A DNA stretch of 64,000 nt. Origin: Macrostomum lignano. Lineage: Eukaryota. The translations under genes and the position numbers were made by a program. The stretch is taken from assembly GCA_002269645.1 (NCBI GenBank), contig NIVC01000241.1, forward strand, positions 33,187 through 97,186, in the 5' to 3' direction. Under the pieces are notes generated by a model. It ran no database searches. It was not told the DNA's origin and was given only the letters and a program-made list of their open reading frames with translations. The stretch's first letter is position 1, and every line of letters begins with the position of its first letter. Positions 9,612 to 61,500 of this stretch are shown one piece after another.

Positions 9612-10282
9612 GTGAGTCCGGATCGAAGGCCATTCAGGTTGGTGGTTGAGTTATAAGACTGTGAATATCCGCATAGCAGCTACACAGATCAGATCATTCT
9701 AAAGCACTTCACGAGCCTCCTATTTAAAATGTTTATTTAGTTCTTAGCTTAATTTGGCCATAGACAGAAAGCGAAAACGAATGACAAGTGAGAGTTAACT
9801 TTGTTAATCAATAAATTATTAGCCAAGCGCAAAGTTATACGAAAAACTCTAAACAGACGCCCAAATGGAAGTAGTAATTCCCCGTGAAATTTCAAAATAC
9901 GGCTTACAATAAAACGCCCAAGTTGTGGAAGGAAGAAAGTTTTGGAAAAAAAGTTCAATATAATATTTTTCAAGGATTTAGCCCACTCCATCAATAGGAT
10001 TAAGAAATTAACTACTTAAAGTAGTTGGCTCTACTTTAAAACATTTTTAATGACTTGTTGGCGCTGTGGATGGCTTAATTTGTCCCGAAAATCCTGGTTG
10101 CCTGATCTCGAATTTTGAGTTCCAATGATAGAAAAAGCGTCATGTAAAAATAAAAGAAGCGTCATGTCGAAATTAAGAGATTCATTTGGGAATCCCTACG
10201 TTGTTGTGGCTTGCAGGGAATCGCTATAATGGTGTAGTGCTATAATGACTCTTGGGGAGAATTACTGAAATGTTAATACTTT

Positions 10283-10325
10283 AGGGTTAGGGTTAGGGCT
10301 AGGGTTAGGCTAGGGTTAGGGTTAG
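10283..10325 (+). repeat. Short interstitial TTAGGG-like tract
   Basis: TTAGGG/CTAGGG units; a more degenerate tract lies at 59875-59920. Confidence 0.7.
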
Positions 10326-17995: not shown

Positions 17996-33548
<15,553 letters not shown>

Positions 33549-35239: not shown

Positions 35240-35990
35240 ATTGCTCTTCCTACCAATGATGACGGCTTTCTGCTGCGGAGATGCGTGGGTCGACGACAAT
35301 TACCGTGCTTGGCTACGCCGACGATCTTGCACTGCTGTCCTCAACTGTTGATGGAGCCCAGCGACAACTGGACATTTATGTTGCTGTTCGGCGAGTGTCA
35401 GCCTGGTGGTCATCACACAGAAGACGACATCGAGGCAGCAATTTTGTGCGGAGGTACAGATGGACAGCAGGCGACGGAGCTTTCGCATTGTCAGCAGTTC
35501 ATCTACCTCTGGTCTGGTTTCCGGCGTTCGCGAGGATCTGGAGAATCTGCGGCGTCGCCGCGGGCTTGCCTGGACTGCTTTCGTTCTGAGGGCAGTCCTG
35601 CGGTCCGAAGCTACCTGACCGCTAGAGAGCGGCGTTGTTCCAGGCGGTGGTCCAGACCGTCCTGGCGACACTCAACTTCATGAGCTTGTCCTGCTGGTGG
35701 CCTGGAATGCACGCTGACATCGAGCGATTGTCAGTCAGTGTGATGTATGCAGCACATGCGGATGTATGCGGCCCAGATTGGGGAAGACCAGAGACACCTG
35801 GCCAGTGGTCATCGAGGATAGCTGCGTCTACATGTACAGCGCTGAGACCTGACACCTGGACGTGGAAGCTCGCTCGAGCAGCAATTGTAGACGCGGCAAA
35901 TGCTGGCCTGCTGCTGCGCGCCGCCTTTAAGATCGCCGGCGAGCGAGTTTCCAACAAGGCGCTGTATCGCTGCGTCGGTTTTGTTGTTGT
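35240..35990 (+). mobile_element. Degenerate non-LTR retrotransposon (RTE-like) reverse transcriptase fragment
   Basis: ITVLGYADDLALLS (YADD motif), LFQAVVQTVL...YSAET, LLRAAFKI...VSNKALY, with frameshifts. Confidence 0.75.
35665..35834 (+). mobile_element. Ty3/gypsy integrase Zn-binding-region fragment nested in the LINE relic
   Basis: WWPGMHADIERL / VSQCDVCSTC / PDWGRPETP..W..RI across small frameshifts, resembling the WWPGM..DI...V..C..C integrase motif. Confidence 0.6.
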
Positions 35991-36964
35991 GCTGTTGCGT
36001 CGAACAGAATATCCTCACACAGACATACTCAAACCTCATAAAAAGCATTTTCTTGTCTTTTCCATTTTCATTGCTTATCATGTTTTGACACTTATATATT
36101 TCTATTATCCAGTATTAACGGCTGTCGATTGAAGAAATTCAGTAGTAGAAAAAGAGGTCACTATACCATGCACCTACAAAAAACCTAGCACGCTACGCTA
36201 CTGGTGTCAGACAGCAGTTGATGTAAGCATCATAGAGGTATAGCTGGATTGCTGAATAGTTTGACAGTTTAATTGTGACAGCCAATCAAAGATCCTGTAT
36301 TAGGGGTTGTCGCACGTAAGAGTAATCAGTAAAAGTCAGTAAGAGCCAATGGTTCTTTTATTTGTTGGTGAGTCGAAAGAGTTCTTTATGAAAATGTTTG
36401 TGAGTTATGAGCGTTTTTTATAGAATATTTTAATTCATAATAAATGCAAGGATGACTTTTAAAAGTAGTCTACCTAAGTCATCCTTGAATTATAAACACG
36501 TTGCCCATGGAAAATTAAATACAGTCTAATTAGATGAAGTCGTTTACCGTAAATATTAAATATACGAGTAGTTAATTTTAATTCAATTAATTTTCTAGAA
36601 AATCTTAATCGTATGACTTAAAATAGAATTATTGAAAATTCGAAGCTTCAATGCTTGTTGTGTAGTGTAGTGTTCTTGTTTTGTGTTTTTATGATTGATT
36701 TCGTATAGACTCAAAGCATAGGAGTTTTATAGCTGCTAATATTTTGGCAGTGTGTTGCCGATCAAATGTACAAGTCCCTTTCATATATAACTTGTGACAC
36801 TTGTCATTTTATCAGCAACTGCTTCCTTGAATTTTCCTAAATTTTCTGTGAATATTTTCTTTTCCTCTCATTCTTGTGCTCTAATTTTTACGTGTACAAT
36901 CACTGTTTATGTTCGGACTTTACGATAATTACGCAGACTTAGTCCCCCTTAGAGTAAACCAAAC

Positions 36965-37649
36965 GGCATTCTTTCGTCTTACGATGCCTGCTATGCATTT
37001 CAATGGGATGGCCCCCATTCGTTTTATGATGCCCATATAAAGCATATGGCATAGGCGTGATGGTGTAGTTTCTGTATAATTTTCGTTTTATGGCAATACA
37101 CGTATTTTGTATTTCATATACTTGACGGATTGTTGTTCATTAATGAAAGTCCAGCGCTATATATTCCGTTTCGTTTTATGATGCCGCAAGTGTTAGAATT
37201 ATTCATTGGGGATCGTAAGACAAAAGTGAGGGGGGGGTACTTTGGGTCCTTAAATTTGTTTACTGCTTCTTCAGCCATGGCTACGAAGTGCCCACTAGGA
37301 TCGTTCTTATAATCGCCCACCAGGCCTATAATATCCATTTTGTTTCGCGATGCCCCAGACGTGACGTTGTAGTTATTCATAAGGCATTGTAAAATGAAAC
37401 AGATTATAATGGCTCAATAGCTTCAGTTGCTAATAAGGGCGGACACAATGTTAAAGCGTGTAAGTTGTGACATTTCCGTGGAAATATAGTCAGAAGTACA
37501 AACCAACTGTGTGACTCAATTTAAGACCTCTGAAACACTGCACTCTTCCATCGTAAAGTATACATTTTTAAGGCCTTCTTGCTTATTTAACATGGGCATC
37601 GTAAGATGAAACATATACAATTTTGGGCATCGTAAGACGAAATAATGCC
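36965..37649. mobile_element. 685-bp MITE with 24-bp TIRs (GGCATTCTTTCGTCTTACGATGCC) and a 3-bp AAC target site duplication
   Basis: TIRs match at 23/24; AAC flanks both ends; several subterminal TTCGTYTTAYGATGCC repeats. Confidence 0.85.
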
Positions 37650-39129
37650 AACTATATACAATGTCTAGGGCAGATGATTAGGCCTAGACTATAGAATCTA
37701 GAATATCTAGAATCTAGATACATATATTTTTCATAGAAATGACTTCTGATAGGCTTTTTATAGAATGCTATTTTTTGTAGAAATGGCATTTTAGAAAACT
37801 GACACTTAAAAATAGGTGCTTTTATATATTTAAATAAGTTCTAGCATAAAAAGTTATTATTAAATGCAAAGCTGATAGTGATAGGCCTATAATAATCTAT
37901 TTTTAAAGCAATCAATTCCTAACAGATTTTTTGTTTTAGAACTTATAATTTGATGAAATTTTCATTGTTTTTAGGCCTACTTTTACAAAAGCAGAGGTTA
38001 GCTTTTTTGTTGTTTCTAATCAAATCAAGGAACATTTTTTATATACTAAGTTGTTGATTATTTACTAAGAGGAAAAAGAAATAAAAGGCTCTGTCTCTAA
38101 TTGTAGGTCTAGCAAAGCAAAGGTAGAAAAAGTTTATTTATAGCCCTCTATGTATTTTAGAACTAAGATTAACTTTTTTAGGCATAGTTGCCAAAAGAAA
38201 TCTTGGCTATTCTAGCTATATTAGGCCTTGCCTAGATTTTTATTGATAGATAAAAGAAAAAATCTAAAAATAGGCCTAATATATTTATCATTTGATATAA
38301 AATTGAGGGTTATATTGAATTTGTCAATATCTAATTTGTCAACAACAAAAATTAAAAGAAATCAAAATCACAAGTTAAGTGAATTTGTCAACAACAAGAC
38401 AGACTCATTATAAAGTTTATTCCTTAGTGCAATAACTGTAGTATAAATTTCTATAGTTCAATGAGCCAAATATTACCAAAAACTTTTATAGGACTTCATA
38501 AGTGCATATTCTAAATGCTATTATGTATATACAACTCAAAATCTAACAAATTGGGCAATCAATGCTACATACATAATATTACATTCTATATAGTTGAGTA
38601 TCTTGATGAAGTATATTAAGAGCTAGTCTATTGGGTGTTTTATATACTATGTATGCTTTATTACACTATTGCATCTTTAGAATAAATCAGTTCACTTTAA
38701 TTCAAATTTATCCTAGGTTTATTTTTCTCCTTAATTATTAATAGAGACTTTTTTAAGTACAACTTCAAATTTCAAAATGAGTACAAAAATAGTTCTGGGG
38801 ATTTATTGCAATTTAGCAAGTTTAAAATCTAAAGATTTAATAGGCTGTAAAAATGTATAGGCCCCTATCAAATAAAACATTTGCCTTTGTTATCTTATAT
38901 GTATCTTCTCAATAGGCTTTTATCTTTATCTTTTAATTTTTCACTTATATTAAATATATACTAGCTAGTCAATAGCATATCATCAGGTAACCAAATTTGT
39001 AAACAATGCATTGTAAGATAAACTGAATTTATCAACATAGTTCAATAGAGTTGACAAATTAAATGTTGACAAATTTGGTGGCACCCAAAATTGAAAGCAA
39101 GAGAACAAATGAGAATAAGATAGTCAAAA

Positions 39130-39560
39130 TGTCAGATAAACAGCATAAAATTTTATATAGGCAATAGTACTTTTCAAATGTTCTAATTTTCTGCTTGTTT
39201 CCACTTTAGTTTTTTTTACAATAGGCCTAGCATTCTTTTAGTTCCTCTCCTTCCCAATTAGGTAATTTTCAATTCAAATTCTAGCATATAATGAGTCTGC
39301 TTTATGTAAGTGCTATAGGTTTCTAAAAAAGCTGTTTATCATTTTTGTATTGAAATTTTGGTAGAAACTTGTTTTTCCTTTCTAATTCTTCTTATTGGAA
39401 TTATTGGCAATATGCTTAATAAGATTCTAAGTCTATTTTTCATAAGGTTTTGAAGTGATATATTGTTGTCCCTTTCTTTGCAAAGTCCAAAAATGACCAA
39501 GTTGTTCCTTTTATCTTTTTTGTTTTATTTCTTTAACAATCTCATTGTAGTTAGGCCCTA
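39130..39560 (-). pseudogene. Decayed LINE ORF1-like fragment inside the CpG-free block
   Basis: Minus strand reads VKEIKQ/KDKRNNLVIFGL and LIGK...RPIV. These resemble the E.ER.RK.NL.IFGL.E and R(L/I)GK...RPI motifs of CR1/L2-type ORF1; many stops. Confidence 0.4.
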
Positions 39561-40964
39561 ATATTGTAAGTTTATCTTTTGATTTCCATATTTAATATTT
39601 TTTAGTCTTTTATCCTCTCTTTAAAAGATGTTGCTTTGTCTTAAAGTTTTTTTAATAGCTCAACTTTCTTCAAAAGTGCTTAAGCATGTATCTTGCAATT
39701 GCAATACCTATAAGAAATTGCTTATGCTAGTGTCAAAGGCTTTGATGATAGTTAAAAAGACTTTTTTGGGAGTTCTTAGTAGCCTTTGTGGCTCTATCTA
39801 TTGTAGCTTCCATATTAGATTCTATCTTCAACCTTTTCTTTGTATGCAACTTGCAAGATAGCTATTTTTGTCATTGTAATTGTTTTTCAATTGTTGTAGT
39901 AGAAAGACACTAGTTAATGATTCAATTTTAGCAATAGGTTGGCTGTTTCATTTAGCTCCTCTTTGAGATATGCCTTAAACTACTTTGGTTAAGTAAAGAG
40001 TTATATCAAAGATATTAAAAAGTTTTTAGGAAAAAGTGATCATAGTGTCTAATAGGTTAATACTAATAGGCCTAAGCTAAATGCATTAAAAATATATTGA
40101 AAATTTAAGCTACAAAACATTTAGTAATTTTTTTATTACTTGACCACTTTTCAAAAATAAAGACTATTATATATATTTTCAAGCATATATGGTTTATCAA
40201 ATCAATGAAATAGAAAAATATTAAAAACAGCTTTCAAATTTTCTTTGAAATCCCTAGGTCTACTATTAGAGGATTCTAGTCATTTTGTCTATTGTCAACT
40301 TGTCTGCCAACAGATGAGTTAACTCTTATCTAAAAAGTAAAAAAAGACAAATTGGTTATACTTATACTTATATGTTAATGTATAAGTACTAGATATGTTT
40401 TTTATTTATGGGGACACTAAATGGACAATTCTACAAGTGTGATAATCATAGGTTTCAAGGTATAATGTTGAATTGTATGAAAAATATTTTATACTTGTAT
40501 TTTGGTCCTAAAATAAGAAGTCTGCATTGTAGTTTATAGAAAAAGGTTTTGGAACTTTAGTTTTATTTGGAAGCAAATAGGACATACTTTAACATTTTTG
40601 CACTATATAGTGCTGATTATGAGTAGTCTTGGGATCATGGTTGGGGCTTCCAATGGAAGGTTGCTGGGCAATGACCCCAGTTGGCTATCCCATCAAGCAA
40701 CCCCTGGCATCCATTTGGTAAATAGCACTAACCTAACCTTTAACAGTAGGTAATTCATATACTTCTAGTTGGCAGTCAAGAAAGTACAACAGGGGAAACA
40801 GTAGCAGCTCCAAAGGTGGATATGCATGCTAGGTTGAATGAACTATTAGTGAAAAGGAGTGTTCTAGCTTGATTTTTTTAATCTCTCATACTTTTTCTCT
40901 ATCCCTTTAAATTAGGTCCAAAATTTGGCGCTACAAAACCAACCAAGAGCTAATTGTAATTTCA

Positions 40965-41210
40965 CCTATAGCAGGCAATGTAGGAAGATAATTCCAGTGA
41001 CCTTGGACTGGTCTTGGATGTCTAAGATAATAGCTACCATCTTTTGGCTATAGTGTACCCTTGTAGTACACAGCTACAGTGAATATGGTAACTTGATTTT
41101 GGTACAAATATACCAATTGCATGGTGTCTTGGTGGGAGCAGGAATAATTTTCACTGTAGTAAAAATGAATAATGATTTCATGCTCTGCCAAGCTAGCTTG
41201 CTATTGGCTA
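40965..41210 (-). pseudogene. Decayed DNA-transposon transposase fragment inside the CpG-free block
   Basis: Reads QASLAEHEIIIHFYYSENYSCSHQDTMQLVYLYQNQVTIFTVAVYYK and, after a frameshift, MVAIILDIQDQSKVT. This resembles the DFSENY..QDEIQSAY..Q.T....ISD..DH.K pattern I recall from animal DDE transposases; superfamily not assigned. Confidence 0.5.
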
Positions 41211-41902
41211 ATAAAGTTAGACTGGAGTCACTGAGTCTGCTTGCTGGCTTAATGACTGGCATGTCACTCTCAGCAGCTAGCTTGAGAAGCAGGGCATAGT
41301 GGTGTTTAGGTGTCTAGGGGAGAGCAGCTCAAACATTGTTCAGCCAGTCATGGAATTCCCTGGACTAGAAGAGGTTCATAACAGTTATTATTTTTATTCT
41401 TTAGAGTTTCCCTTTAAATATCTTTATTATTAAATCTGTATGTATAAGTTTGAATATACTTCTTTGTTGTAGTAGTACAAAGTATCATGAAATGTTTTAT
41501 TCCTAGTTATCTGCTGCTATAGTTATCTTATATAGGACCTGTGGTTCATAGAAATGTTCTGTTTAAGGCAATTTTATAGATTACTAAATCTAGATAGTTC
41601 TGATTTCTACACCGATTTCAACTTTACCTTCTACACCTTGGGTAAGGCTGTGATAGCTAGATGCTAATCGTGAGTGACAATTACAAGTTATTGTAATGTT
41701 TATAGTAGTAACATATGTTTAGATGGGATTGAGAAGCAAGCTATAAAAAGTGTTAATGAATAATGAAAACTTTGGGTTTTTAGTATCAATTTGAGTTTTC
41801 CTTGACTTGCCTATTAAATCCCGTCTGCTTAAGCCGCGTGACCATATTTTAAGTTTTAATGAGTTAATAAATCCACTTCAACTTGCAGTCTGTTAGCCAG
41901 CC

Positions 41903-44900
41903 ATGTCAGCTCGCCAAAGGCGCAAACAGCAGCAGCCGAAGCTGCAACAGCACCACGAAGTAAAGCCGGACAAGACGGAGCAAGCTTCCAGCGGTAGTGG
42001 CTTTCTCAGCTGGCGAAGCAGCTTTGCACTGACATGCCTGGTTGCCATTGCGGCAGGTTATTTCACCTACAGAATGAACTCTCGCATGTGGGAGAATCAC
42101 ATACATTTTTCCCATTTGGCAACCATCGAGCGTGAGATGTTTCTAACTAGCGAGCTGGGATTCTACTATAGCTTTTTCAAACAGGTTGTCGAAGCGCCCA
42201 CCCTGTTTGATGGCGTCCGTCTGTTGCTAAGCGACACGTTGTCCGAGCATCCCGACACTATTAATGCCCTGCGCAGGTTCAATCTCTATCCGGAGCTCTG
42301 CATCGGCGCAATGTACCGAGTTTATGCTGGACTAGCCCAGCAGTTCGGCTGGCACACCAGGGACTGCTATCAGGTGAGCGAGCTTGTACTGTATTTCTAT
42401 TTACCGTTGCTAAATTAGGTGACCCTGTATTAGGGTATCTATTTATGTTTATAGTTACTTCGGCTGTTTACTTTAACATCCGTGAAGTAAGACTAGTTAG
42501 TATATTCCTTCTGCTTATAACATCTGTTGAGCAAATCCGGATCACTGCTGATTTAAATGCAAGCTACTACTGAGAGCTCTTATGAGTAGTCTTGATTTGG
42601 CTCTTAAGCAATCGCTATCCTTATAGATTTTCTGTTTAAGTGGCCGATTGCCTACCAGAAAGGATGCATGAATATATATTAATGATAATAATAATAATAC
42701 TTGATTACACCTGCCCCAAATAGCAGATGCGCAACCGACAGCTCAGCCGCAGCTATTTGCGCGGCGCATCTGAAGGCTGCGTACGGCTGTTCAGTCCAAG
42801 GACTGATGGGGGGGGGGTCGCCACACACACCATCAATTACCCCAGCTAATGCTGGCACCCATTTTACAGCTGGGTGAACTGAAGCAATGCAGAGTTAAGT
42901 GTCTTGCTCAAAGACACAAATTGTTCCGAGTGGGTCCAGAATCAAACCCCCGACCTTCAAGTCGTGAGTCCGACGCTCTAACCACTAAGCTACAACCCAT
43001 CCTCAAAGTATATACTACTTACAGAGTAGCTTAGAATCCTCTTCACGATAGGCTTGTAATACAATAAGATTGCATTTAGCTACTTAATTTAGTAGTATGA
43101 TAAAGCGTGGCTTCTTTGAAGAAATTGGTAAGTACGTTTCGTACAGTCACGTATGTCACAGAAGACCATGTTATAAAGTGGGAATTTCGTAAGATTGAAA
43201 CTTCACAAGATCGAAATTTTTCGACGAATTCAAAATCGAAATTATTGAACTCTGTCAGGTAAATCGGGGCTCGGATATGCCGCCCGTGCAAAGCTGCGAA
43301 GGCATTGGCGAGCCGATGTACTTCTACGTTGAAGTTGTCTACCTGCTGAGCGGACTCACCGCCGCTGGCCTGGCCCTGCTGGCCAGCTATGCCCGGCCTG
43401 AGGATCGGCCCTGCCCCCTGTCTGGCGTCATAGCTACAGTCGGTTACCTAGGCAACCACCGAGAGTGCACCCGGGTGCAATGGACGCCAACCCTGCGCGA
43501 GAGTTTCAGCTTCCCTCTGCTGGTGCTGCACCAGATTTGTCTGTTGAATTTTCTTCGCCGCGGCGGCACAGAGGAACGGCCGAAATCTGTTGCTGTCCTG
43601 CTTCTGGCCGGCTCTGCTCTTCTGTTTCTGTTGCCTTGGCAGTTTGCCCAATTTGCTCTGCTAGTGGAGGCCGGCGCCCTGCTGTGCGCCCACGCGCTGG
43701 GCTACCTTGGTCACAGGCTGACCCGCCTAGCCATGCTGGCGCTGCTGCTGGCTCTGGCTCTGGCATTCGCTCTGCAATTCGGCAACGTTATGCTGGTGAG
43801 CAGCCTGCTGTGCTCCGCCCTGCTCACCGCCCTGCCCCTGTTGCAGCTGCACCAGCTGATTAGCCGGCTGGCACCCATGTGCATCGCTGCGCCCGCCCTG
43901 CCTGTGCTCTGGCTCTGCTGCACCCTGCTGGCCAAGGCCGGCCTGGCCTGGCTGCTTGGCGCCGAACAGGTGAGGCTGTCCTTGGGGTCACTGATTCACA
44001 CAGACTGGGGTTGTTAGATAACTGATTCACATAGACTAAGATTGTTAGATGACTGATTCACACAGAATAGGGTTGTTAGATGACTGATTCGCACAGAATA
44101 GGGTTGTTAGATGACTGATTCACAGACTGGGGTTGTTAGATGACTGATTCACACAGACTGGGGTTGTTAGATGACTGATTCACACAGACTGGGGCTGTTA
44201 GATGACTGATTCACACAGAATAGGGTTGTTAGATGACTGATTCACACAGAATAGGGTTGTTAGATGACTGATTCACAGACTGGGGTTGTTAGATGACTGA
44301 TTCACACAGACTGGGGTTGTTAGATGACTGATTCACACAGACTGGGGCTGTTAGATGACTGATTCACATAGACTAAGATTGTTAGATGACTGATTCACAC
44401 AGACTAGGGTTGTTAGATGACTGATTCACATAGACTAAGATTGTTAGATGACTGATTCATGCAGAGTAGGGTTGTTAGATGACTGATTCACACAGACTAG
44501 GGTTGTTAGATAACTGATTCACACAGACTAGGGTTGTTAGATAACTGATTCACGCAGACTAGGGTTGTTAGATGACTGATTAGAAATATAAGATGTGTCG
44601 AACAGAGATGAGCAATCTAACTAATTTACCGCTTCAGGACAGCCACATGTGGGACATCTTACTAAGCAAGTTAAGCGCAGGCCGAACCTTTCACTCGATG
44701 ATGTACACCTGCGCCAAAGAGTTTGACTTCTACGATCCCCAGTCGTTAATTGAGCTGAGCAAGACTCTGGCGCTGCCTGCCGGATTAGCCAGCTTAGCCT
44801 ACGTCTGCTACCGGGTTGCCGCGCTTGTGATCGCCCGCAGCCGCCAGTACCGAGCCCGCCTGGTGCTCGGCCGCCCGGAGCCGCCAGTCTGCGTGCCGGC

Positions 44901-46123
44901 AGAATCGCCCGGCGTTGACGCCGCCTCGGTGACCCTCGCCTGCCAGCTGGTTGGCTTCGGCCTGCTGGCCGGCCTCATAATGCGACTCAAGCTGTTCTTC
45001 ACTCCGCTGCTGGTGCTGCACGCTGCCGCTCTGCCAATGCCTGCGGCTAACCGGCTGCGCCTGCCAGCGCTGCTGCTGCTGCTGTGCGCCTCCGGCTGGC
45101 AGGGCAGCGCCAACTATGCTGCCGAGATGAGCATCAGCGGCGAGTATTCCGACTGGCACACCGAGCAGCTGGTCTATTGGATCCGGGACAGTACTAAGCC
45201 TGGCGAATCATTTGCCGGCACCATGCCTGTGACGGCCACTGTTCGATTGGTTGCTGATCGGCCTATTGTTAATCATCCGCATTATGAGGACGCCGGGATG
45301 CGGGCAAGGACTAAACAGGTGGGTTAGATATTCCCCTCAAATTTGCCGCTTCCTCTCATCTGTGCTGATGATGGCTGCCGCTTCCCCTCTCACCTGTGCT
45401 GATGATGGCTGCCGCTTCCCCGCTTCCCCTCTCACCTGTGCTGATGATGGCTGCCGCTTCCCCGCTTCCCCTCTCACCTGTGCTGATGATGGCTGCCGCT
45501 TCCCCTCTCACCTGTGCTGATGATGGCTGCCGCTTCCCCGCTTCCCCTCTCACCTGTGCTGATGATGGCTGCCGCTTCCCCTCTCATCTGTGCTGATGAT
45601 GGCTGCCGCTTCCCCGCTTTCCCTCTCATCTGTGCTGATGATGGCTGCCGCTTCCCCGCTTTCCCTCTCATCTGTGCTGATGATGGCTGCCGCTTCCCCG
45701 CTTCCCCTCTCACCTGTGCTGATGATGGCTGCCGCTTCTCCGCTTCCCCTCTCACCTGTGCTGATGATGGCTGCCGCTTCTCCGCTTCCCCTCTCACCTG
45801 TGCTGATGATGGCTGCCGCTTCCCCTCTCACATCTGTCGATTTTGACTGGACTTTGCAGGTATACAGCATGTATAGCCACCTGTCTCTGGCTGACTGGTC
45901 TCGCACAGCAAAGTCTCTAAGCGTCAACTACACCCTGCTAGTGAAAGGCTACTGCCGCCGCGGGCCCTGCTCAATGCCGGATATATTTGAGCGGACAGAG
46001 GCTCAAAATCCAGACTCGCCTGTCCTGTGCGAACTCATGGCCAGCCGGCCGGACCAGCTGCGGCCTCATCTGATGAGGGTGTTTGACAATCCTAAGTACA
46101 GTGTGTTCCGGGTGGTGTACTGA
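41903..46123 (+). CDS. DPY19L: DPY19-like protein C-mannosyltransferase (~708 aa): exons 41903-42373, 43259-43969, 44638-45318, 45860-46123
   Basis: Motifs FSHLATIEREM, ELGFYYSFFK, DTINALRRFNLYPE, VNRG...SCEGIGEP, RVQWTPTLRESFSFP, LPWQFAQF, FHSMMYTCAKEFDF, LIMRLKLFFTP, RPIVNHPHYEDAGMRART, CSMPDIF. All three introns are phase 0 GT-AG; many hydrophobic helices. Confidence 0.95.
42685..43002 (-). mobile_element. tRNA-derived SINE, copy 1 (DPY19L intron 1)
   Basis: Reverse complement shows a Pol III A/B-box-like head, a TGTGTCTTTGAGCAAGACACTT...CTGTAAAATGGGT core (CORE/Deu-type resemblance) and an (ATT)n tail. Near-identical to 63523-63803. Confidence 0.85.
43990..44582. repeat. 31-bp minisatellite (GACTGATTCACACAGACTGGGGTTGTTAGAT), ~19 copies, DPY19L intron 2
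   Basis: Direct reading. Confidence 0.95.
45345..45835. repeat. 34/41-bp minisatellite (CCCCTCTCACCTGTGCTGATGATGGCTGCCGCTT, +/- CCCCGCT), DPY19L intron 3
   Basis: Direct reading. Confidence 0.95.
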
Positions 46124-54789: not shown

Positions 54790-56250
54790 TCAGTCTTCAT
54801 CCAGTTGCCGCCTAAGCTCGGCAACGCCCATCGTGACCATCTGACAGAATTCTGAAATTCATTGGCGGTTAACAATCGCCCTGAAATCAAAACTGTCACG
54901 TTACTTAGTAACTCCCAATAAGATGCACCGCTCGCTACTTACCTGAGTAGTCAATCTTTCCGTCCTGATTCTTGTCAACCAGGCGGACCAGCCGGTCGAA
55001 GTCGTCGCGCGCGCGCTCTCCTCTAGTGCCTCGCTGCCAATCTGAAACAGGGCCCGGTACAGCTCGTCATATTCCAGGAAGCCGTTGCCGTTCCTGTCGA
55101 ACACGCGGAAGCTGTGCAGCAGGTCGTCCTGCACCTGCGCCCGTGGCCTGTACGCGCCTGACAACAGCTTGTTGACGTCCGAGAGGCTCAGCTGACTGTC
55201 CTCGTCAAAGCCTTGCTCCCCCAGCTGCTGCATCACCGCATCCTGGCAGGCGCAGTCCTGGCCCAGCGCCTGTACGAACTGGCGCACATTGCGACCCTCG
55301 ATGTAGCCTCGCTCTTCGGTAATTAGGCGCCAGGACTCGCAGAATTCTGCCCGATCCTCAGGCGGAATGTCGGAATCGGCAAATGCTTCCGCAAATTCTT
55401 CCGGTACGTCTCCGGCTGGTTCTGCTTCAGCATCGGCTTCAGCTTCAGGCTCCGCCTTCTCTTCTTCAGCAGCTTCGCCTTCTCCAGCTTCCTCTGCAGT
55501 AGCTTCGCCTTCTCCAGCTTCCTCTTCAGCAGCTTCGCCTTCTCCAGCTTCCTCTTCAACAGCTTCGCCTTCTCCAGCTTCCTCTGCAGCAGCTTCGCCT
55601 TCTCCAGCTTCCTCTTCAGCAGCTTCGCCTTTTCCAGCTTCCTCTTCAGCAGCTTCGCCTTCTCCAGCTTCCTCTTCAGCAGCTTCGCCTTCTCCAGCTT
55701 CTTCTTCGGCTGCAGCCTCGCCCTCTCCCGTTTCCTCTTCAGCGACTTCGCCTTTTCCAGCTTCCTCTTCAGCAGCTTCGCCTTCTCCAGCTTCCTCTTC
55801 AGCAGCTTCGCCTTCTCCAGCTTCCTCTTCAGCAGCTTCGCCTTCTCCAGCTTCTTCTTCGGCTGCAGCCTCGCCCTCTCCCGTTTCCTCTTTAGCGACT
55901 TCTGGCTCGGCCTTCGCTTCGCCTTCTGCCTCTCTTGCTTCTTCATCAGCTTCACCGCCTGCCTCCGCCTCTGCGTCGCCTTTGGCGTCATCAGCCTCCC
56001 CGCCAGCCTCGCCTCCGCCTTCGTCCGCAGCCTCTGTATCGCCACTGACTTCGGCCTCCGCCTCGCCGCCCGCTTCTGCCTCTGCCTCTCCGCCAGCCTC
56101 CGCCGCTTCTTCACCAGCCTCCGCTTCGTCAGCAGCCTCCGTCTCTGCCTCGCCGCCCGCTTCTGCCTCCGCCTCACCTGCTCCGGTTTCAACCTCTGCA
56201 ACTTCCTCCTCCTGCGTCTCCTCCGTGTTCTGGGCCTCGCTCTCTTCCAT
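54790..56250 (-). CDS. Calmodulin/troponin-C-like EF-hand protein with a ~280-aa Glu/Ala/Gly-rich N-terminus: exons 56250-54943 and 54851-54790, with an apparent +2 frameshift at 55006-55016
   Basis: Canonical EF loop FRVFDRNGNGFLEYDEL. A second loop DDFDRLVRLVDKNQDGKIDYS-EFCQMVT appears only after a frame change in a (CG)n run. That frame matches a phase-1 GTAAGT donor (54942) and a TTTCAG acceptor (54852); stop at 54790-54792. Confidence 0.85.
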
Positions 56251-58584: not shown

Positions 58585-61500
58585 ATGTCAGCTGAAACTA
58601 AGCAAAATGGTGTTTTAGACCCAAGTGCACAGAGTATCGTATACGAATTTTGTCACTTGCTCGAAAAATCGAAACAATTATTTAATGGACTTCGGTAGGT
58701 TTTTCCATTAGTTAAAGGAACTCTTTCTTTCCACTTTTCACCTTTCTTTCCTTTCACCTACTTCATGATATTTAATCTAGTGTGATTTTTTAATTCTAAT
58801 TTATGTTATTGAGAAATTGTGTTTTTCTAATTTTTAAATATCTTTAAAACTATTTATCAAGTTATTAATAAAACAAATAAAAATGAAATTGTTGATTAAA
58901 TAACTTACTACATATTTTAAAGTTATTTAATTTTTTCAAAACCAATAATTTCGAATTAAATCATTTGAACTATTTACTTTATAATTTGTTAGGGCTTGTG
59001 AATTGAAGAATTGTAGGCAATTTTTTCAGTAAGTTTTATCCAAATTAGTGCTTTTGAATGCAAATTTTCCATGCTTATTAGTCTTTAATCTCCATAAATA
59101 TTTTCTCTCCACATTATTCAGCTTGTTAAACCGCAACCTTCTTCATTTTTAACTATTCATTTTTATATTTTGTTTCTGGAAAACAAACATGAAGAGTTAT
59201 CAAAAAGTTGAAAAATTAAGTTGAGCAACTATAGTTAAACTATAAATAATCAAAGCAGTACTATTTCAAGTATCTAAAATCTTACTTGATTTGGTAGATG
59301 TCTTGAACTTTTAGCTCAAAGCTTATGCATATTAAATGATTTCTATGCTAATAAAAGTACATAAAAGTACATAGTTACTCGTTGTTTTTAAGGCGTTTTT
59401 ATAACTTTCAATTTCTACTATTATTTCCTGTACTAAATTTTCATCTTTTTTTTTTATCTGTGGTATATAACTAATTATTATATAGTACTTATGGCCATAC
59501 TGTTTAACCAAACCAGAGACCTGCCCCAATACGGACATAAGCAATGGCAGTCGTACTTTGGCCGGGCTTTCGACGTCTACACGAAGCTGTGGAAATTCCA
59601 GCAGCAACACAGGGAGCTGCTGGACGGTGCCTACGGCCTGAAGCGCTGGCAGATCGGAGAGATCGCGTCCAAGATTGGGCAGCTCTACTATCACTACTAC
59701 CTGCGCACCAGCGAGACCAACTATTTGAATGAGTCTTTTGCTTTCTACTCAGCAATAAGAATGCGAGCCTACTATTCCAAGGCTAACAAGGAAGAGAGGT
59801 AGGGATATCTCATGAAGCTGAGGGTTGCGGAGGCAGGCAATAAGGATCAAAACATGAAAGTTTACTGCCGACGAGTTAGGTTAGGGTTATGGTTATGGTT
59901 TTAGGTTAGGGTTAGGTTTACAGGTTGAGGTTATCCGAACCTCAGTCGCATACCCAAAAGTGACCTGAACCTCTGCTACATACCCAAAAGTGACCTGAAC
60001 CTCAGTCACATACCCAAAAGTGACCTGAACCTCAGTCACATACCCAAAAGTGACCTGAACCTCAGTCACATACCCAAAAGTGACCTGAACCTCAATCACA
60101 TACCCAAAAGTGACCTGAACCTCAGTCACATACCCAATGGTGACCTGAACCTCTGCTACATACCCAAAAGTGACCTGAACCTCAGTCACATACCCGAAAG
60201 TGACCTGAACCTCAGTCGCATACCCGAAAGTTAGGCTCCAATGGCTCGCGAGTTGGCGGCTCAGTGCTTCCGCAACCTGAACTTGGTTTTGCACTATTCT
60301 GTCTTTAACCCATGGAAATTAGGCCTGTTTTTTACAACTTTCCTTTAGGAAGTTCCCGCTTGTTGAGCGACGCAAAATTGAATTGGATTTCCCTAATCTG
60401 CAGGCCGGATCTGATGGTGAAGAAGCTGCGCTACTATGCCAGATTTGTTATAGTCTGCCTGCTGCTCAAAAAGATGAAGCTAGTCCGCGATCTCATTCGC
60501 GAGCTAGCGAAACTAATTGACGACTACACGGGCATCTACCAGCCAGCCGACGCGCTCGAGTGGTCCATGGTACTGCAGGAGATCAAAGCTTTCATGGACG
60601 CTGATAGCGCCGTGCAAGTGGTTGAGCACGACTCATCGCCTGTAGTGCTCACCCACCGGCTGGGCCCGGCCACCTGCCCGCCCACCGAGCGGAGCCTCTC
60701 CGGCGCCAGCCCGCTGCACCTGGCCGAGATACTCATTGTTGGCGATTGCGCTGATCAGGTGCGAATGTGTGCGGCCACTGGTATTGGTGTCGGGCTGAGG
60801 TTGCGGTCACTTTTGGGTATGTGACTGAAGTTCAGGTCACTTTCGGGTATGCGACTGAGGTTCAGGTCACTTTTGGGTATGCGACTGAGGTTCAGGTCAC
60901 TTTTGGGTATGTGACTGAGGTTCAGGTCCCTTTCGGGTATGTGACTGAGGTTCAGGTCACTTTCGGGTATGTGACTGAGGTTCAGGTCTCTTTCGGGTAT
61001 GCGACTGAGGTTCAGGTCACTTTCGGGTATGTGACTGAGGTTCAGGTCACTTTCGGGTATGTGACTGAGGTTCAGGTCACTTTCTGGTTGGCTTCTTGGT
61101 TTCTTATTGGTACCGATTAAGATTGGGTAGACCTTAGGTATCTGATTGAGTTTGTGGTGAGCTGGTGGGATCCAGTTCACAACCGGTTGATCATCCCCGC
61201 CATCTCGCAGGTGAAGTTCAGCGAGCTGACGCTGGACATGTTCCGGATGCTGCAGACGCTCGAACTGGAGCCTCAGGAGCTCGGCGCGGCTGGCGTCGGC
61301 GCGGGCCTCGGGCTCGGCCTGCGCCTCGGCGGCGGGGCGAGCAGCGTGGCGGGCTCGGTCTCGTGCGAGGCCAGCCCAGTGAGCAGGCGGCCGCAGCAGC
61401 AGCAGCCGATGGAGAACGGCAGCAGGCGGGACAACCCGCACAAGTACCTGCTGTACAAGCCCGGCACCGCCCAGATGACCATGTTCCTGGCTTCCAGCTT

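What the first reader, a model, noticed from the sequence alone, without database searches (positions are those of the whole stretch)
37650..41610. ~4-kb transposon graveyard with one CpG and TpA excess: RIP-like hypermutation in an animal genome?
Seen: scanning line by line I found a single CpG (40929) between ~37650 and ~41610, whereas similarly AT-rich DNA at 57.6-59.5 kb and all flanks have many. At roughly 28-30% GC, several tens would be expected. Three 60-nt spot counts gave TpA/ApT of 10/7, 5/3 and 10/5 and (CpA+TpG)/(ApC+GpT) of 5/7, 6/6 and 3/6, so CpA/TpG is not in excess, unlike simple CpG decay. TAGGCCTA-type words recur about seven times, as expected from CAGGCCTG with C->T on both strands. 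The block holds decayed LINE and transposase ORFs. Established: CpG-methyl deamination yields TpG/CpA excess; fungal RIP converts CpA to TpA. Inference: a targeted C->T process acting on CpG and CpA/CWG within a bounded repeat domain, which I do not know to be described in flatworms. Alternatives are very old CpG decay plus AT drift, or a foreign or chimeric segment.
Basis: partly seen in the sequence, partly recalled or inferred. Interest (0 to 1): 0.85.

Follow-up and report, generated by a model that had tools for sequence, protein, structure and literature searches.

The report
CpG-free 4-kb block in a flatworm genome
A 4-kb non-coding, AT-rich stretch just upstream of a Macrostomum-type flatworm gene has lost all but one of its roughly 75-85 expected CpG sites while its neighbours keep theirs. 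The most likely cause is cytosine-methylation-linked C-to-T decay confined to this block, not fungal-style RIP, but one locus cannot prove this.

Summary
Window 37639-41612 holds one CpG (40929) among 550 cytosines, against 232 CpG among 1129 cytosines in the surrounding 35-44 kb. CpG o/e is 0.012, with a 95% upper bound of 0.055. The left edge is sharp and coincides with the end of a CpG-bearing DNA transposon.

The host is Macrostomum lignano or a very close relative. That lineage is reported to keep DNMT1 and DNMT3 and to have low 5mC whose genomic pattern is unknown.

- Pfam finds no LINE or transposase remnant.
- TpA is not in excess, and classical RIP indices are not met.
- TAGGCCTA (6 copies, 0.08-0.09 expected) is not a by-product of C-to-T mutation.

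New findings:
- TAG/CTA is enriched in every kb of the block.
- In purine/pyrimidine coding the block looks fully native, so all its oddity lies on the transition axis.
- Native DNA with simulated C>T (CpG about 100%, CAG about 60%, other C about 27%) reproduces its trinucleotide profile.
- So few CpGs have re-formed that the purge is ongoing or very recent.

Best reading: block-restricted, methylation-linked CpG decay (about 0.4). Rivals are a recently arrived foreign segment, a RIP-like mutator, and an artefact. No homologous copy could be obtained, so mutation direction is untested.

The parts
37639..41612 (.). CpG-void block: one CpG in about 3.97 kb, GC 29.6%, non-coding.
   Evidence: ML interval 37648-41612, with 1 CpG per 550 C inside and 232 per 1129 C outside.
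37650..40600 (.). Sub-block A: GC 26-27%, no CpG. CAG/CTG is halved (o/e 0.62) and TAG/CTA o/e is 1.59. It holds all the TAGGCCTA motifs.
40601..41610 (.). Sub-block B: GC 38%, one CpG against about 36 expected. TGG/CCA is 1.83 and CAG/CTG 1.6, which look like deamination products. TAG/CTA is 1.63.
40929..40930 (.). The only surviving CpG, in the context TTTGGCGCTAC.
37679..40074 (.). Span holding six exact TAGGCCTA palindromes (starts 37679, 37882, 37972, 38271, 39222, 40067) and three near-copies (38222 TAGGCCTT, 38858 TAGGCCCC, 39552 TAGGCCCT). Every GGCC in the block lies in T-AGGCC.
   Evidence: Expected count is 0.08-0.09. There is no extended consensus, and none occurs elsewhere in the window.
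38301..39092 (.). Decayed element bounded by 43-nt inverted repeats (77% complementary) that carry AATTTGTCAAC sub-repeats. This is the only transposon-like structure found inside the block.
   Evidence: (I1).
36965..37649 (.). 685-bp non-autonomous DNA transposon abutting the left edge of the block. It has 24-nt TIRs (23/24 complementary), seven subterminal GGCATCGTAAGACGAAA copies and normal CpG content. It sets the sharp left boundary.
   Evidence: (I2).
41903..42418 (+). First coding exon of a DPY19-type C-mannosyltransferase gene, about 290 bp downstream of the right edge of the block, with normal CpG. Further exons lie at 43277-44017 and 44593-45327.
35635..36132 (+). Control: a decayed retrotransposon integrase zinc-finger remnant (WWPGM motif) 1.5 kb to the left. 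The surrounding kb has CpG o/e 1.05, so old native transposon debris is not CpG-depleted here.

Best explanation
The block is old, non-coding, partly repeat-derived DNA of the flatworm's own genome. It has been stripped of CpG by C-to-T (G-to-A) transitions acting on both strands and confined to this stretch. The most likely driver is dense, sustained germline 5-methylcytosine laid down by the DNMT1/DNMT3 system that Macrostomum retains, followed by deamination. CpG sites are lost essentially completely, CAG sites (the usual minor non-CpG target of DNMT3-type enzymes) about half, and other cytosines at the background rate. That background rate also pulled GC down from about 48% to 27-38%. The pressure is still on or stopped very recently. 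The sharp left edge is the border of a younger, still CpG-rich transposon insertion.

Shown: the void, its limits, strand symmetry, native-like purine/pyrimidine pattern, and reachability from native composition by C>T.

Inferred: methylation as the cause, the direction of change, and restriction to this block by targeting (for example small-RNA-guided) rather than by chance.

The TAGGCCTA motif is not explained by this account.
For: - The void and its statistics are solid.
- Two compositionally different sub-blocks (27% and 38% GC) are both CpG-free, so the effect is domain-wide and not a property of one sequence family.
- Sub-block B shows raised TGG/CCA (1.83) and CAG/CTG (1.6), the expected products of CGG/CCG deamination.
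- Purine/pyrimidine k-mer spectra (k=3-6) of the block lie closer to the native mean than 21-24 of 29 native 4-kb pieces. YR steps are 0.228 against 0.235, so transitions suffice and transversions can play only a minor part.
- In forward simulation from the window's own DNA, the score falls from 233 to 45-46 with CpG about 100%, CAG about 59% and other C about 27% mutated. That is inside the native range of 11-78.
- The block is strand-symmetric: TAG 126 against CTA 102.
- AG/CT is 1.27 and AC/GT 0.84, the second-order signature reported for methylation-driven CpG loss.
- With 440 CA/TG and 729 transversion precursors and only one CpG present, at most 0.6-0.8% of the relevant A>G/T>C changes have occurred since the purge ended. 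The process is therefore current or recent.
- The host is M. lignano or a near relative, reported to keep DNMT1 and DNMT3 with low 5mC of unknown distribution (PMC9246332; PMC11292947; PMC10658182).
- As a weak hint of CpG hypermutability in this genome's transposons, the neighbouring MITE's subterminal repeats differ at CpG positions 6/28 against 5/91, and all six are transitions (p=0.02).
Against: - No methylation data and no ancestral or paralogous copy were available, so both direction and context of change are model-based.
- Other transposon debris 0-1.5 kb away (the MITE and the integrase remnant) and other AT-rich DNA keep normal CpG. Methylation would therefore have to be highly selective.
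- Native tandem arrays show no significant CpG hypermutability (3.8% against 2.1%, p=0.12).
- An o/e of 0.055 or less is far below the vertebrate equilibrium (about 0.2-0.27). It needs a CpG transition rate at least about 70 times the A>G/T>C rate (my estimate from the precursor counts), which is more extreme than the human germline.
- The TAG/CTA excess needs an extra term: either CAG raised, or equally well CTA protected (score 46.5).
- The TAGGCCTA enrichment is unexplained.
Confidence: 0.4

Rival explanations
1. Recently arrived segment. The 4 kb was inserted, by horizontal transfer or by duplication from a differently treated compartment of the same genome such as heavily silenced heterochromatin, already CpG-free and carrying its own 'dialect' (TAG-rich, TAGGCCTA).
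For: - One event would explain the void, the sharp left edge at a transposon end, the TAG/CTA excess in every kb (1.17-2.04 against a native maximum of 1.14), and a motif seen nowhere else in 60 kb.
- It would also explain the absence of regenerated CpG.
- It would explain why neighbouring old transposon debris is unaffected.
Against: - No donor was found: no match in plasmids or phages, none in viral or metagenome contigs with transition-tolerant 45-mers, and nothing on record for its ORF.
- No target-site duplication or terminal repeats were found at the block ends.
- The purine/pyrimidine spectrum is thoroughly native-like, though that test was not calibrated against foreign eukaryotic DNA.
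- It only moves the question elsewhere, because no ordinary genome has CpG o/e of 0.055 or less over 4 kb.
- TA 0.94 and TAG 1.57 are unlike mammalian DNA (from my own knowledge).
Confidence: 0.17
2. RIP-like genome defence in an animal. A fast, homology-triggered, DNMT-like or deaminase mutator converts C to T in duplicated sequence, with preference CpG >> CAG, and stops at the repeat border.
For: - The purge is complete and sharply bounded while unique or diverged flanks are spared.
- About 27-32% of the other cytosines are also converted in the best-fit model, a magnitude typical of RIP.
- It acts on both strands.
- It is recent.
- CpG-directed RIP-like hypermutation exists in basidiomycetes (PMC3318451).
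Against: - No evidence that the block is repeated: no copy in the window even in transition-blind coding.
- Classical RIP indices are not met.
- General CpA>TpA fits worse than the CAG-only term, and TAA and TAC are not raised.
- The adjacent 685-bp transposon, a repeat by nature, is untouched.
- RIP is reported mainly from Ascomycota (PMC9246332), and no paper found here reports it in an animal, so the prior is very low.
Confidence: 0.08
3. Assembly or sequencing artefact. This could be a chimeric join with contaminant DNA (food diatom or other), or systematic consensus errors at heavily modified CpG in long-read data.
For: - There is an abrupt compositional break.
- The published M. lignano assembly was built from noisy PacBio reads plus short reads in a very repeat-rich, partly duplicated genome (PMC5730564).
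Against: - Native sequence lies on both sides, so two independent chimeric joins would be needed.
- Modification-induced errors are partial and would not remove about 75-190 CpGs without exception.
- The block also differs in TAG and CAG content, and has normal complexity (zlib 0.303 against 0.29-0.32).
Confidence: 0.07
4. Very old neutral decay only: AT-biased drift, with CpG lost by chance or by ordinary mutation without any special targeting.
For: 'CpG + uniform C>T' already brings the composition score to 71, at the upper edge of native variation.
Against: - Equally AT-rich native DNA keeps CpG o/e 0.83-0.93.
- P(<=1 CpG) is 4e-21 even at the lowest native o/e of 0.59.
- CpGs would re-form quickly without continued pressure.
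Confidence: 0.02

Closest known systems
Methylation-driven CpG decay of silenced repeats (vertebrates; some invertebrates with transposon methylation, such as sponges and some cnidarians)
   Same: - CpG is lost selectively.
- Loss is strand-symmetric.
- AG/CT is up and AC/GT down.
- The deamination products TGG/CCA and CAG/CTG are visible in the less-decayed part.
- The host lineage has DNMT1 and DNMT3.
   Different: - Depletion is near-total (o/e <=0.055, against about 0.2-0.6).
- It is confined to one 4-kb block in a genome that is otherwise CpG-replete (mean 0.86).
- Neighbouring transposon remnants are untouched.
- There is an extra TAG/CTA excess and a TAGGCCTA motif.
Ascomycete RIP and the AT-rich 'transposon graveyard' isochores it produces (Neurospora, Leptosphaeria)
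   Same: - A bounded, AT-rich, non-coding block with C>T on both strands.
- A large fraction of all cytosines is converted in the best-fit model.
- CpG is absent.
   Different: - The host is an animal.
- TpA/ApT is only 1.08 and (CpA+TpG)/(ApC+GpT) is 1.28, so there is no CpA depletion or TpA flood.
- Repeat dependence is untested.
- No RID-type enzyme is known for the host.
Basidiomycete RIP-like hypermutation at TpCpG (Microbotryum, Puccinia; PMC3318451)
   Same: It is directed at CpG rather than CpA.
   Different: - All four NCG trinucleotides are gone here, not only TCG.
- It is a fungal system, defined from alignments of transposon copies, which were not available here.
APOBEC-type editing of retroelement cDNA (vertebrates; PMC4866542)
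   Same: Clustered C>T/G>A changes confined to an inserted element.
   Different: That editing is strand-asymmetric (G>A on the sense strand) and is not CpG-directed. The block is roughly symmetric, and no retroelement coding remnant was found in it.

Membership tests
Fungal RIP (ascomycete type) | TpA/ApT raised (>=0.89 in the usual index) | tested here: met
   The value is 1.08. It is not distinctive, because native 1-kb windows range from 0.14 to 1.54.
Fungal RIP (ascomycete type) | (CpA+TpG)/(ApC+GpT) lowered (<=1.03) and composite index >0 | tested here: not met
   The ratio is 1.28 and the composite index is -0.19. CA/TG rho is 1.07.
Fungal RIP (ascomycete type) | Mutations restricted to duplicated sequence, seen as C>T against other copies | not testable with these tools
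Fungal RIP (ascomycete type) | RID/Masc1-type methyltransferase in the genome; fungal host | tested here: not met
   The host is a macrostomid flatworm. Its enzyme repertoire cannot be tested from this window.
Basidiomycete TCG hypermutation | Loss specific to TpCpG | tested here: not met
   ACG, CCG and TCG number 0 and GCG numbers 2 (both-strand counts), so all CpG contexts are lost.
Methylation-driven CpG decay | CpG o/e depressed relative to GpC and to unmethylated DNA of the same genome | tested here: met
   CpG is 0.012, GpC is 1.5, and native AT-rich DNA has CpG 0.83-0.93.
Methylation-driven CpG decay | Excess of the products TpG/CpA | tested here: inconclusive
   Over the whole block CA/TG is 1.07, so there is no excess. 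Sub-block B has TGG/CCA 1.83 and CAG/CTG 1.6. AG/CT is 1.27, as in the vertebrate second-order signature.
Methylation-driven CpG decay | 5mC present on the sequence in the germline; DNMT1/DNMT3 present | not testable with these tools
   From the literature only: M. lignano keeps DNMT1 and DNMT3 and has low 5mC of unknown pattern.
Methylation-driven CpG decay | Other silenced repeats of the genome show the same depletion | tested here: not met
   Within the window, the MITE at 36965-37649 and the integrase remnant region (o/e 1.05) are not depleted. Genome-wide this is untested.
APOBEC-type retroelement editing | Strand-asymmetric G>A on one strand of a retroelement | tested here: not met
   TAG 126 against CTA 102, and C 547 against G 625. 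No RT domain was found.
Horizontally acquired DNA | Identifiable donor or empty site, plus insertion signature (TSD/termini) | tested here: not met
   No match in the searched collections. No TSD or TIR at the block ends. The empty site cannot be tested.

The most novel reading that the evidence does not exclude
A free-living flatworm (Macrostomum) possesses a sequence-targeted cytosine-to-thymine hypermutation system that erases every CpG and most CAG within sharply bounded blocks. It would work like fungal RIP but have a different context preference, and would be the first such genome defence seen in an animal. TAGGCCTA could then be a motif that recruits or resists it.
Probability: 0.08. 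Interest if true: 0.9.

Novelty: new variant of a known kind. Interest (0 to 1): 0.52.

Why it matters
Macrostomum lignano is a laboratory model that, unlike planarians and parasitic flatworms, kept DNMT1 and DNMT3. [quoted passage not shown]

A block with total CpG loss, sharp limits and evidence that the pressure is current would point directly at what that cryptic system targets. It would also allow a concrete test: methylation calls, small RNAs and DNMT RNAi at a defined locus.

If the cause turned out instead to be an active mutator, it would be the first RIP-like defence in Metazoa. If it is a foreign segment, it is a clean case of recent DNA acquisition next to a gene start.

Tried and rejected
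- **Coding content.** Six-frame Pfam on both strands gave nothing. Alternative genetic codes, including the flatworm mitochondrial codes, gave no long ORFs beyond chance. There is no tRNA and no Rfam family. A NUMT, organelle, viral or bacterial origin is therefore rejected.
- **Synthetic or vector and phage origin.** No match in plasmids or phages.
- **Copies within the window.** Sensitive blastn and transition-blind (R/Y) blast found only polypyrimidine low-complexity matches. The AATTYGTCAAY motif has a single chance match outside the block.
- **Relatives elsewhere.** Exact-product look-ups for three window ORFs and the M. lignano SCAI fragment are not on record. Logan contigs with a 63%-identical SCAI belong to another species, with GC 36% and CpG o/e 1.2-1.3, and are uninformative.
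- **CpG>AG/CT transversion model.** I tried it to explain AG/CT and TAG. It fits no better (60-83) and is contradicted by the unchanged YR step frequency.
- **Symmetric CWG (plant-like) and general CpA models.** These fit worse than CAG-only.
- **TAGGCCTA as an excision footprint, hAT or PIF terminus, or part of a longer repeat.** There is no consistent flanks or consensus. Palindromic hexamers as a class are not enriched (93 against 91).
- **CpG hypermutability in native tandem arrays as a proxy for genome-wide methylation.** Not significant.
- **Helitron or TSD signatures at the block ends.** None seen.
Full report
**1. The observation**

The window is 64 kb with 47% GC and an overall CpG o/e of 0.73. 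Between 37638 and 41613 there is a single CpG, at 40929.

For 37650-41610 (3961 bp, 547 C, 625 G) 86 CpG are expected at independence, or 74 at the level of native AT-rich DNA. The probability of one or fewer is 4e-31 at o/e 0.86, 4e-21 at the lowest native value (0.59), and 6e-7 at a vertebrate-like 0.2. The 95% upper bound on the true o/e is 0.055.

A two-changepoint likelihood scan over 35-44 kb places the CpG-poor interval at 37648-41612. Inside it there is 1 CpG per 550 C; outside there are 232 per 1129 C, for a log-likelihood gain of 95. The right edge is uncertain by about 100 bp to the left and 50 bp to the right.

The block is not cryptically simple. Its compressibility and distinct-8-mer fraction fall within the control range, and no tandem array was found in it. 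All other long CpG-free gaps in the window are minisatellites whose unit lacks CG. GpC o/e is 1.5, similar to native AT-rich DNA (1.17-1.58).

**2.

- TpA is not in excess. Its o/e is 0.94-0.95, and TpA/ApT of 1.08 is inside the spread of native 1-kb windows.
- No LINE or transposase remnant is detectable. Six-frame translations of 37400-41900 with X at stops give no Pfam family at E<=1 on either strand.
- There is no tRNA, no Rfam family, and no ORFs under alternative codes.
- The only transposon-like feature inside the block is a 43-nt inverted-repeat pair at 38301-38343 / 39050-39092. It is 77% complementary and carries AATTTGTCAAC sub-repeats. 'Graveyard' is therefore only weakly supported.

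**3. Surroundings and host**

The left edge of the block abuts, to the base, the right terminal inverted repeat of a 685-bp non-autonomous DNA transposon at 36965-37649. That element has 24-nt TIRs (23/24 complementary), seven subterminal copies of GGCATCGTAAGACGAAA, and normal CpG.

Further left lie AT-rich DNA with CpG o/e about 0.9 and a decayed integrase zinc-finger remnant (35635-36132) in a kb with o/e 1.05. The right edge lies about 290 bp before the start codon of a DPY19-type C-mannosyltransferase gene. Its three large exons are separated by introns that are largely minisatellites.

The window also carries PDE4 and SCAI exons, a kinase-domain ORF and a 449-aa ORF with an EF-hand. The SCAI exon matches a UniRef Macrostomum lignano fragment. 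BLAST reports 79% identity over the gapped alignment, but the two ungapped stretches (17/17 and 89/90 residues) are near-identical.

The host is therefore M. lignano or a very close relative. This fits the published description of that genome: few introns, and 15% simple and tandem repeats (PMC5730564).

**4. Composition beyond CpG**

Compared with AT-rich native DNA, the block has:
- CA/TG of 1.07, against 1.11-1.15;
- AG/CT of 1.27, against 0.92-1.00;
- AC/GT of 0.84, against 0.87-1.02.

Allowing for closure, removing CG should lift all other C-initial dinucleotides by about 1.17-fold. CA/TG is therefore lower than expected and CT/AG slightly higher. The CA:CT ratio is 0.84, against about 1.2.

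At the trinucleotide level the largest change is TAG/CTA, at o/e 1.57 against 0.84. This holds in both sub-blocks (1.59 in A at 27% GC; 1.63 in B at 38% GC). Every 1-kb piece of the block (1.17-2.04) exceeds the maximum of 46 native 1-kb pieces (1.14).

CAG/CTG is halved in A (0.62) but high in B (1.6), and B also has TGG/CCA at 1.83. TAA/TTA and GTA/TAC are lower than in native DNA, so there is no general CpA>TpA flood. The block is roughly strand-symmetric (TAG 126, CTA 102), which excludes single-strand cDNA editing.

**5. Transition-blind test**

I recoded the sequence to purine/pyrimidine. In that coding, the k-mer spectra of the block (k=3-6) are closer to the native mean than those of 21-24 of 29 native 4-kb pieces. 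YR steps are 0.228 against 0.235.

All the oddity therefore lies on the C/T and G/A axis, as expected if native-like DNA was altered by transitions only. Loss of CpG by transversion (CG>AG/CT), which I tried as an explanation for the AG/CT and TAG excess, fits no better (60-83) and is limited by the YR count. The test was not calibrated against foreign eukaryotic non-coding DNA, so it argues only weakly against a foreign origin.

**6. Forward simulations**

I started from the window's own DNA outside tandem arrays (46 kb, 48% GC) and applied strand-symmetric C>T with context-dependent rates. I then compared the 32 symmetric trinucleotide o/e values with those of the block, using a chi-square-like score. 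Native 3961-nt pieces score 11-78 (median 36) against the native mean, and the unmutated comparison scores 233.

| Model | Score |
|---|---|
| CpG only | 172 (136 from an AT-rich start) |
| CpG + all CpA | 117 (83 from an AT-rich start) |
| CpG + symmetric CWG | 92-110 |
| CpG + uniform | 71 |
| CpG + CAG + uniform | 45-46 |

The best model has CpG about 100% mutated, CAG about 59% and other C about 27%.

A scan of 12 contexts shows that only two single terms help: CAG raised (44.6) or CTA protected (46.5). The robust residual is therefore simply the TAG/CTA excess.

These are fits, not proofs. They show that the composition is reachable from native DNA by C>T with a CpG >> CAG > other hierarchy, that classical RIP preference is not the best description, and that 'CpG purge plus AT drift' already comes close.

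**7. TAGGCCTA**

There are six exact copies and three near-copies, all in 37679-40074 and none elsewhere in the 64 kb. The expected count is 0.09. Native DNA contains 0.85 possible transition precursors (YRGGCCYR) per 3 kb. The fitted mutation model yields 0.08 TAGGCCTA and 1.7 GGCC per 2951 nt, against 6 and 9 observed.

There is no extended consensus around the motif, and palindromic hexamers as a class are not enriched. The motif is real, is not a by-product of hypermutation, and remains unexplained.

**8. Timing**

The block contains 440 CA/TG and 729 CC/CT/AG/GG dinucleotides, each one substitution away from CpG. With one CpG present (Poisson upper bound 4.74), the per-site probability of the relevant A>G/T>C change since the purge ended is at most 0.6-0.8%.

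The CpG-removing pressure is therefore still acting or stopped very recently, or the block arrived very recently. A fossil of an ancient methylation regime is excluded.

Read as an equilibrium, the same numbers require a CpG transition rate at least about 70 times the A>G/T>C rate. This is my own estimate from the precursor counts, and it is more extreme than the human germline.

**9. Weighing the explanations**

*Block-restricted, methylation-linked C>T decay, about 0.4.* This is favoured because:
- the host lineage keeps DNMT1 and DNMT3, with low 5mC whose pattern is unknown (PMC9246332, PMC11292947, PMC10658182);
- the changes lie on the transition axis, on both strands;
- the less-decayed sub-block shows deamination products;
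- the CpG >> CAG hierarchy resembles DNMT3-type specificity (established knowledge, not tested here);
- the AG/CT-up, AC/GT-down pattern matches the second-order signature of methyl-CpG loss reported across vertebrates (preprint).

Against it:
- neighbouring transposon debris is not depleted;
- native tandem arrays show no significant CpG hypermutability;
- only a weak hint of it comes from the MITE's subterminal repeats (p=0.02);
- the depletion is extreme;
- TAGGCCTA is unexplained.

*Recently arrived segment, 0.17.* It would explain several anomalies at once. However, it has no donor and no insertion signature, and it leaves the origin of the void unexplained.

*RIP-like mutator, 0.08.* It fits the sharp bounds and the completeness of the purge. 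However, it fails the classical indices, has no evidence of repeat dependence, and has no reported precedent in animals that I could find.

*Artefact, 0.07.* It needs two chimeric joins or error-free systematic miscalls.

*Pure drift.* It is excluded.

These figures sum to 0.74. The remaining probability is not assigned to any named explanation.

**10. What could not be done**

No other copy of the block's sequences, no homeologous locus, no sister-species locus and no methylation data could be reached with the available collections. The direction and context of substitutions, the repeat status of the block and its methylation state are therefore untested. These are the decisive next steps.

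Noticed in passing
window 36965-37649: A complete 685-bp MITE-like DNA transposon. It has 24-nt TIRs (23/24 complementary) and seven subterminal GGCATCGTAAGACGAAA copies, three in one orientation on the left and four inverted on the right. The copies differ from each other mainly by transitions at their CpG positions (6/28 against 5/91, p=0.02).
   Followed up: partly
window 59876-61088: Two 30-bp tandem arrays of about 10 units each (59937-60231 and 60795-61088) are reverse complements of one another, differing by CCCAAAAG against CCCGAAAG. They flank the SCAI exon ORF (60312-60824) like a foldback. A TTAGGG-like run (59876-59934) sits beside the left array.
   Followed up: no
window 10281-10325: An interstitial (TTAGGG)7 telomere-type repeat.
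   Followed up: no
window 43990-44581 and 45378-45831 (and about 25 arrays overall): Introns of the DPY19 gene consist largely of minisatellites (31 bp x19 and 42 bp x11). Minisatellites with 14-47-bp units occupy a large share of the whole window, in line with the reported 15% simple and tandem repeats of M. lignano.
   Followed up: partly
window 35635-36132: An ORF with a decayed retrotransposon integrase zinc-finger (WWPGM motif; PF17921, E=0.0026, below the Pfam cutoff). The surrounding region is 55-59% GC with CpG o/e 1.05, so old transposon debris here is not CpG-depleted.
   Followed up: partly
window 54901-56250 (- strand): A 449-aa ORF built mostly from 30-nt coding repeats, with one C-terminal EF-hand (residues 375-407). 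No exact product is on record.
   Followed up: partly
window 24461-25201: About 740 bp of (GA)n-rich low-complexity DNA with a 38-bp higher-order period.
   Followed up: no
loci L001-L003 (Logan SRR26629860/62/63): Contigs from another organism that encode a SCAI 63% identical to the window's. They have GC 35-37% and CpG o/e 1.2-1.3, with no CpG-free stretch longer than 204 bp and no AGGCCT.
   Followed up: partly
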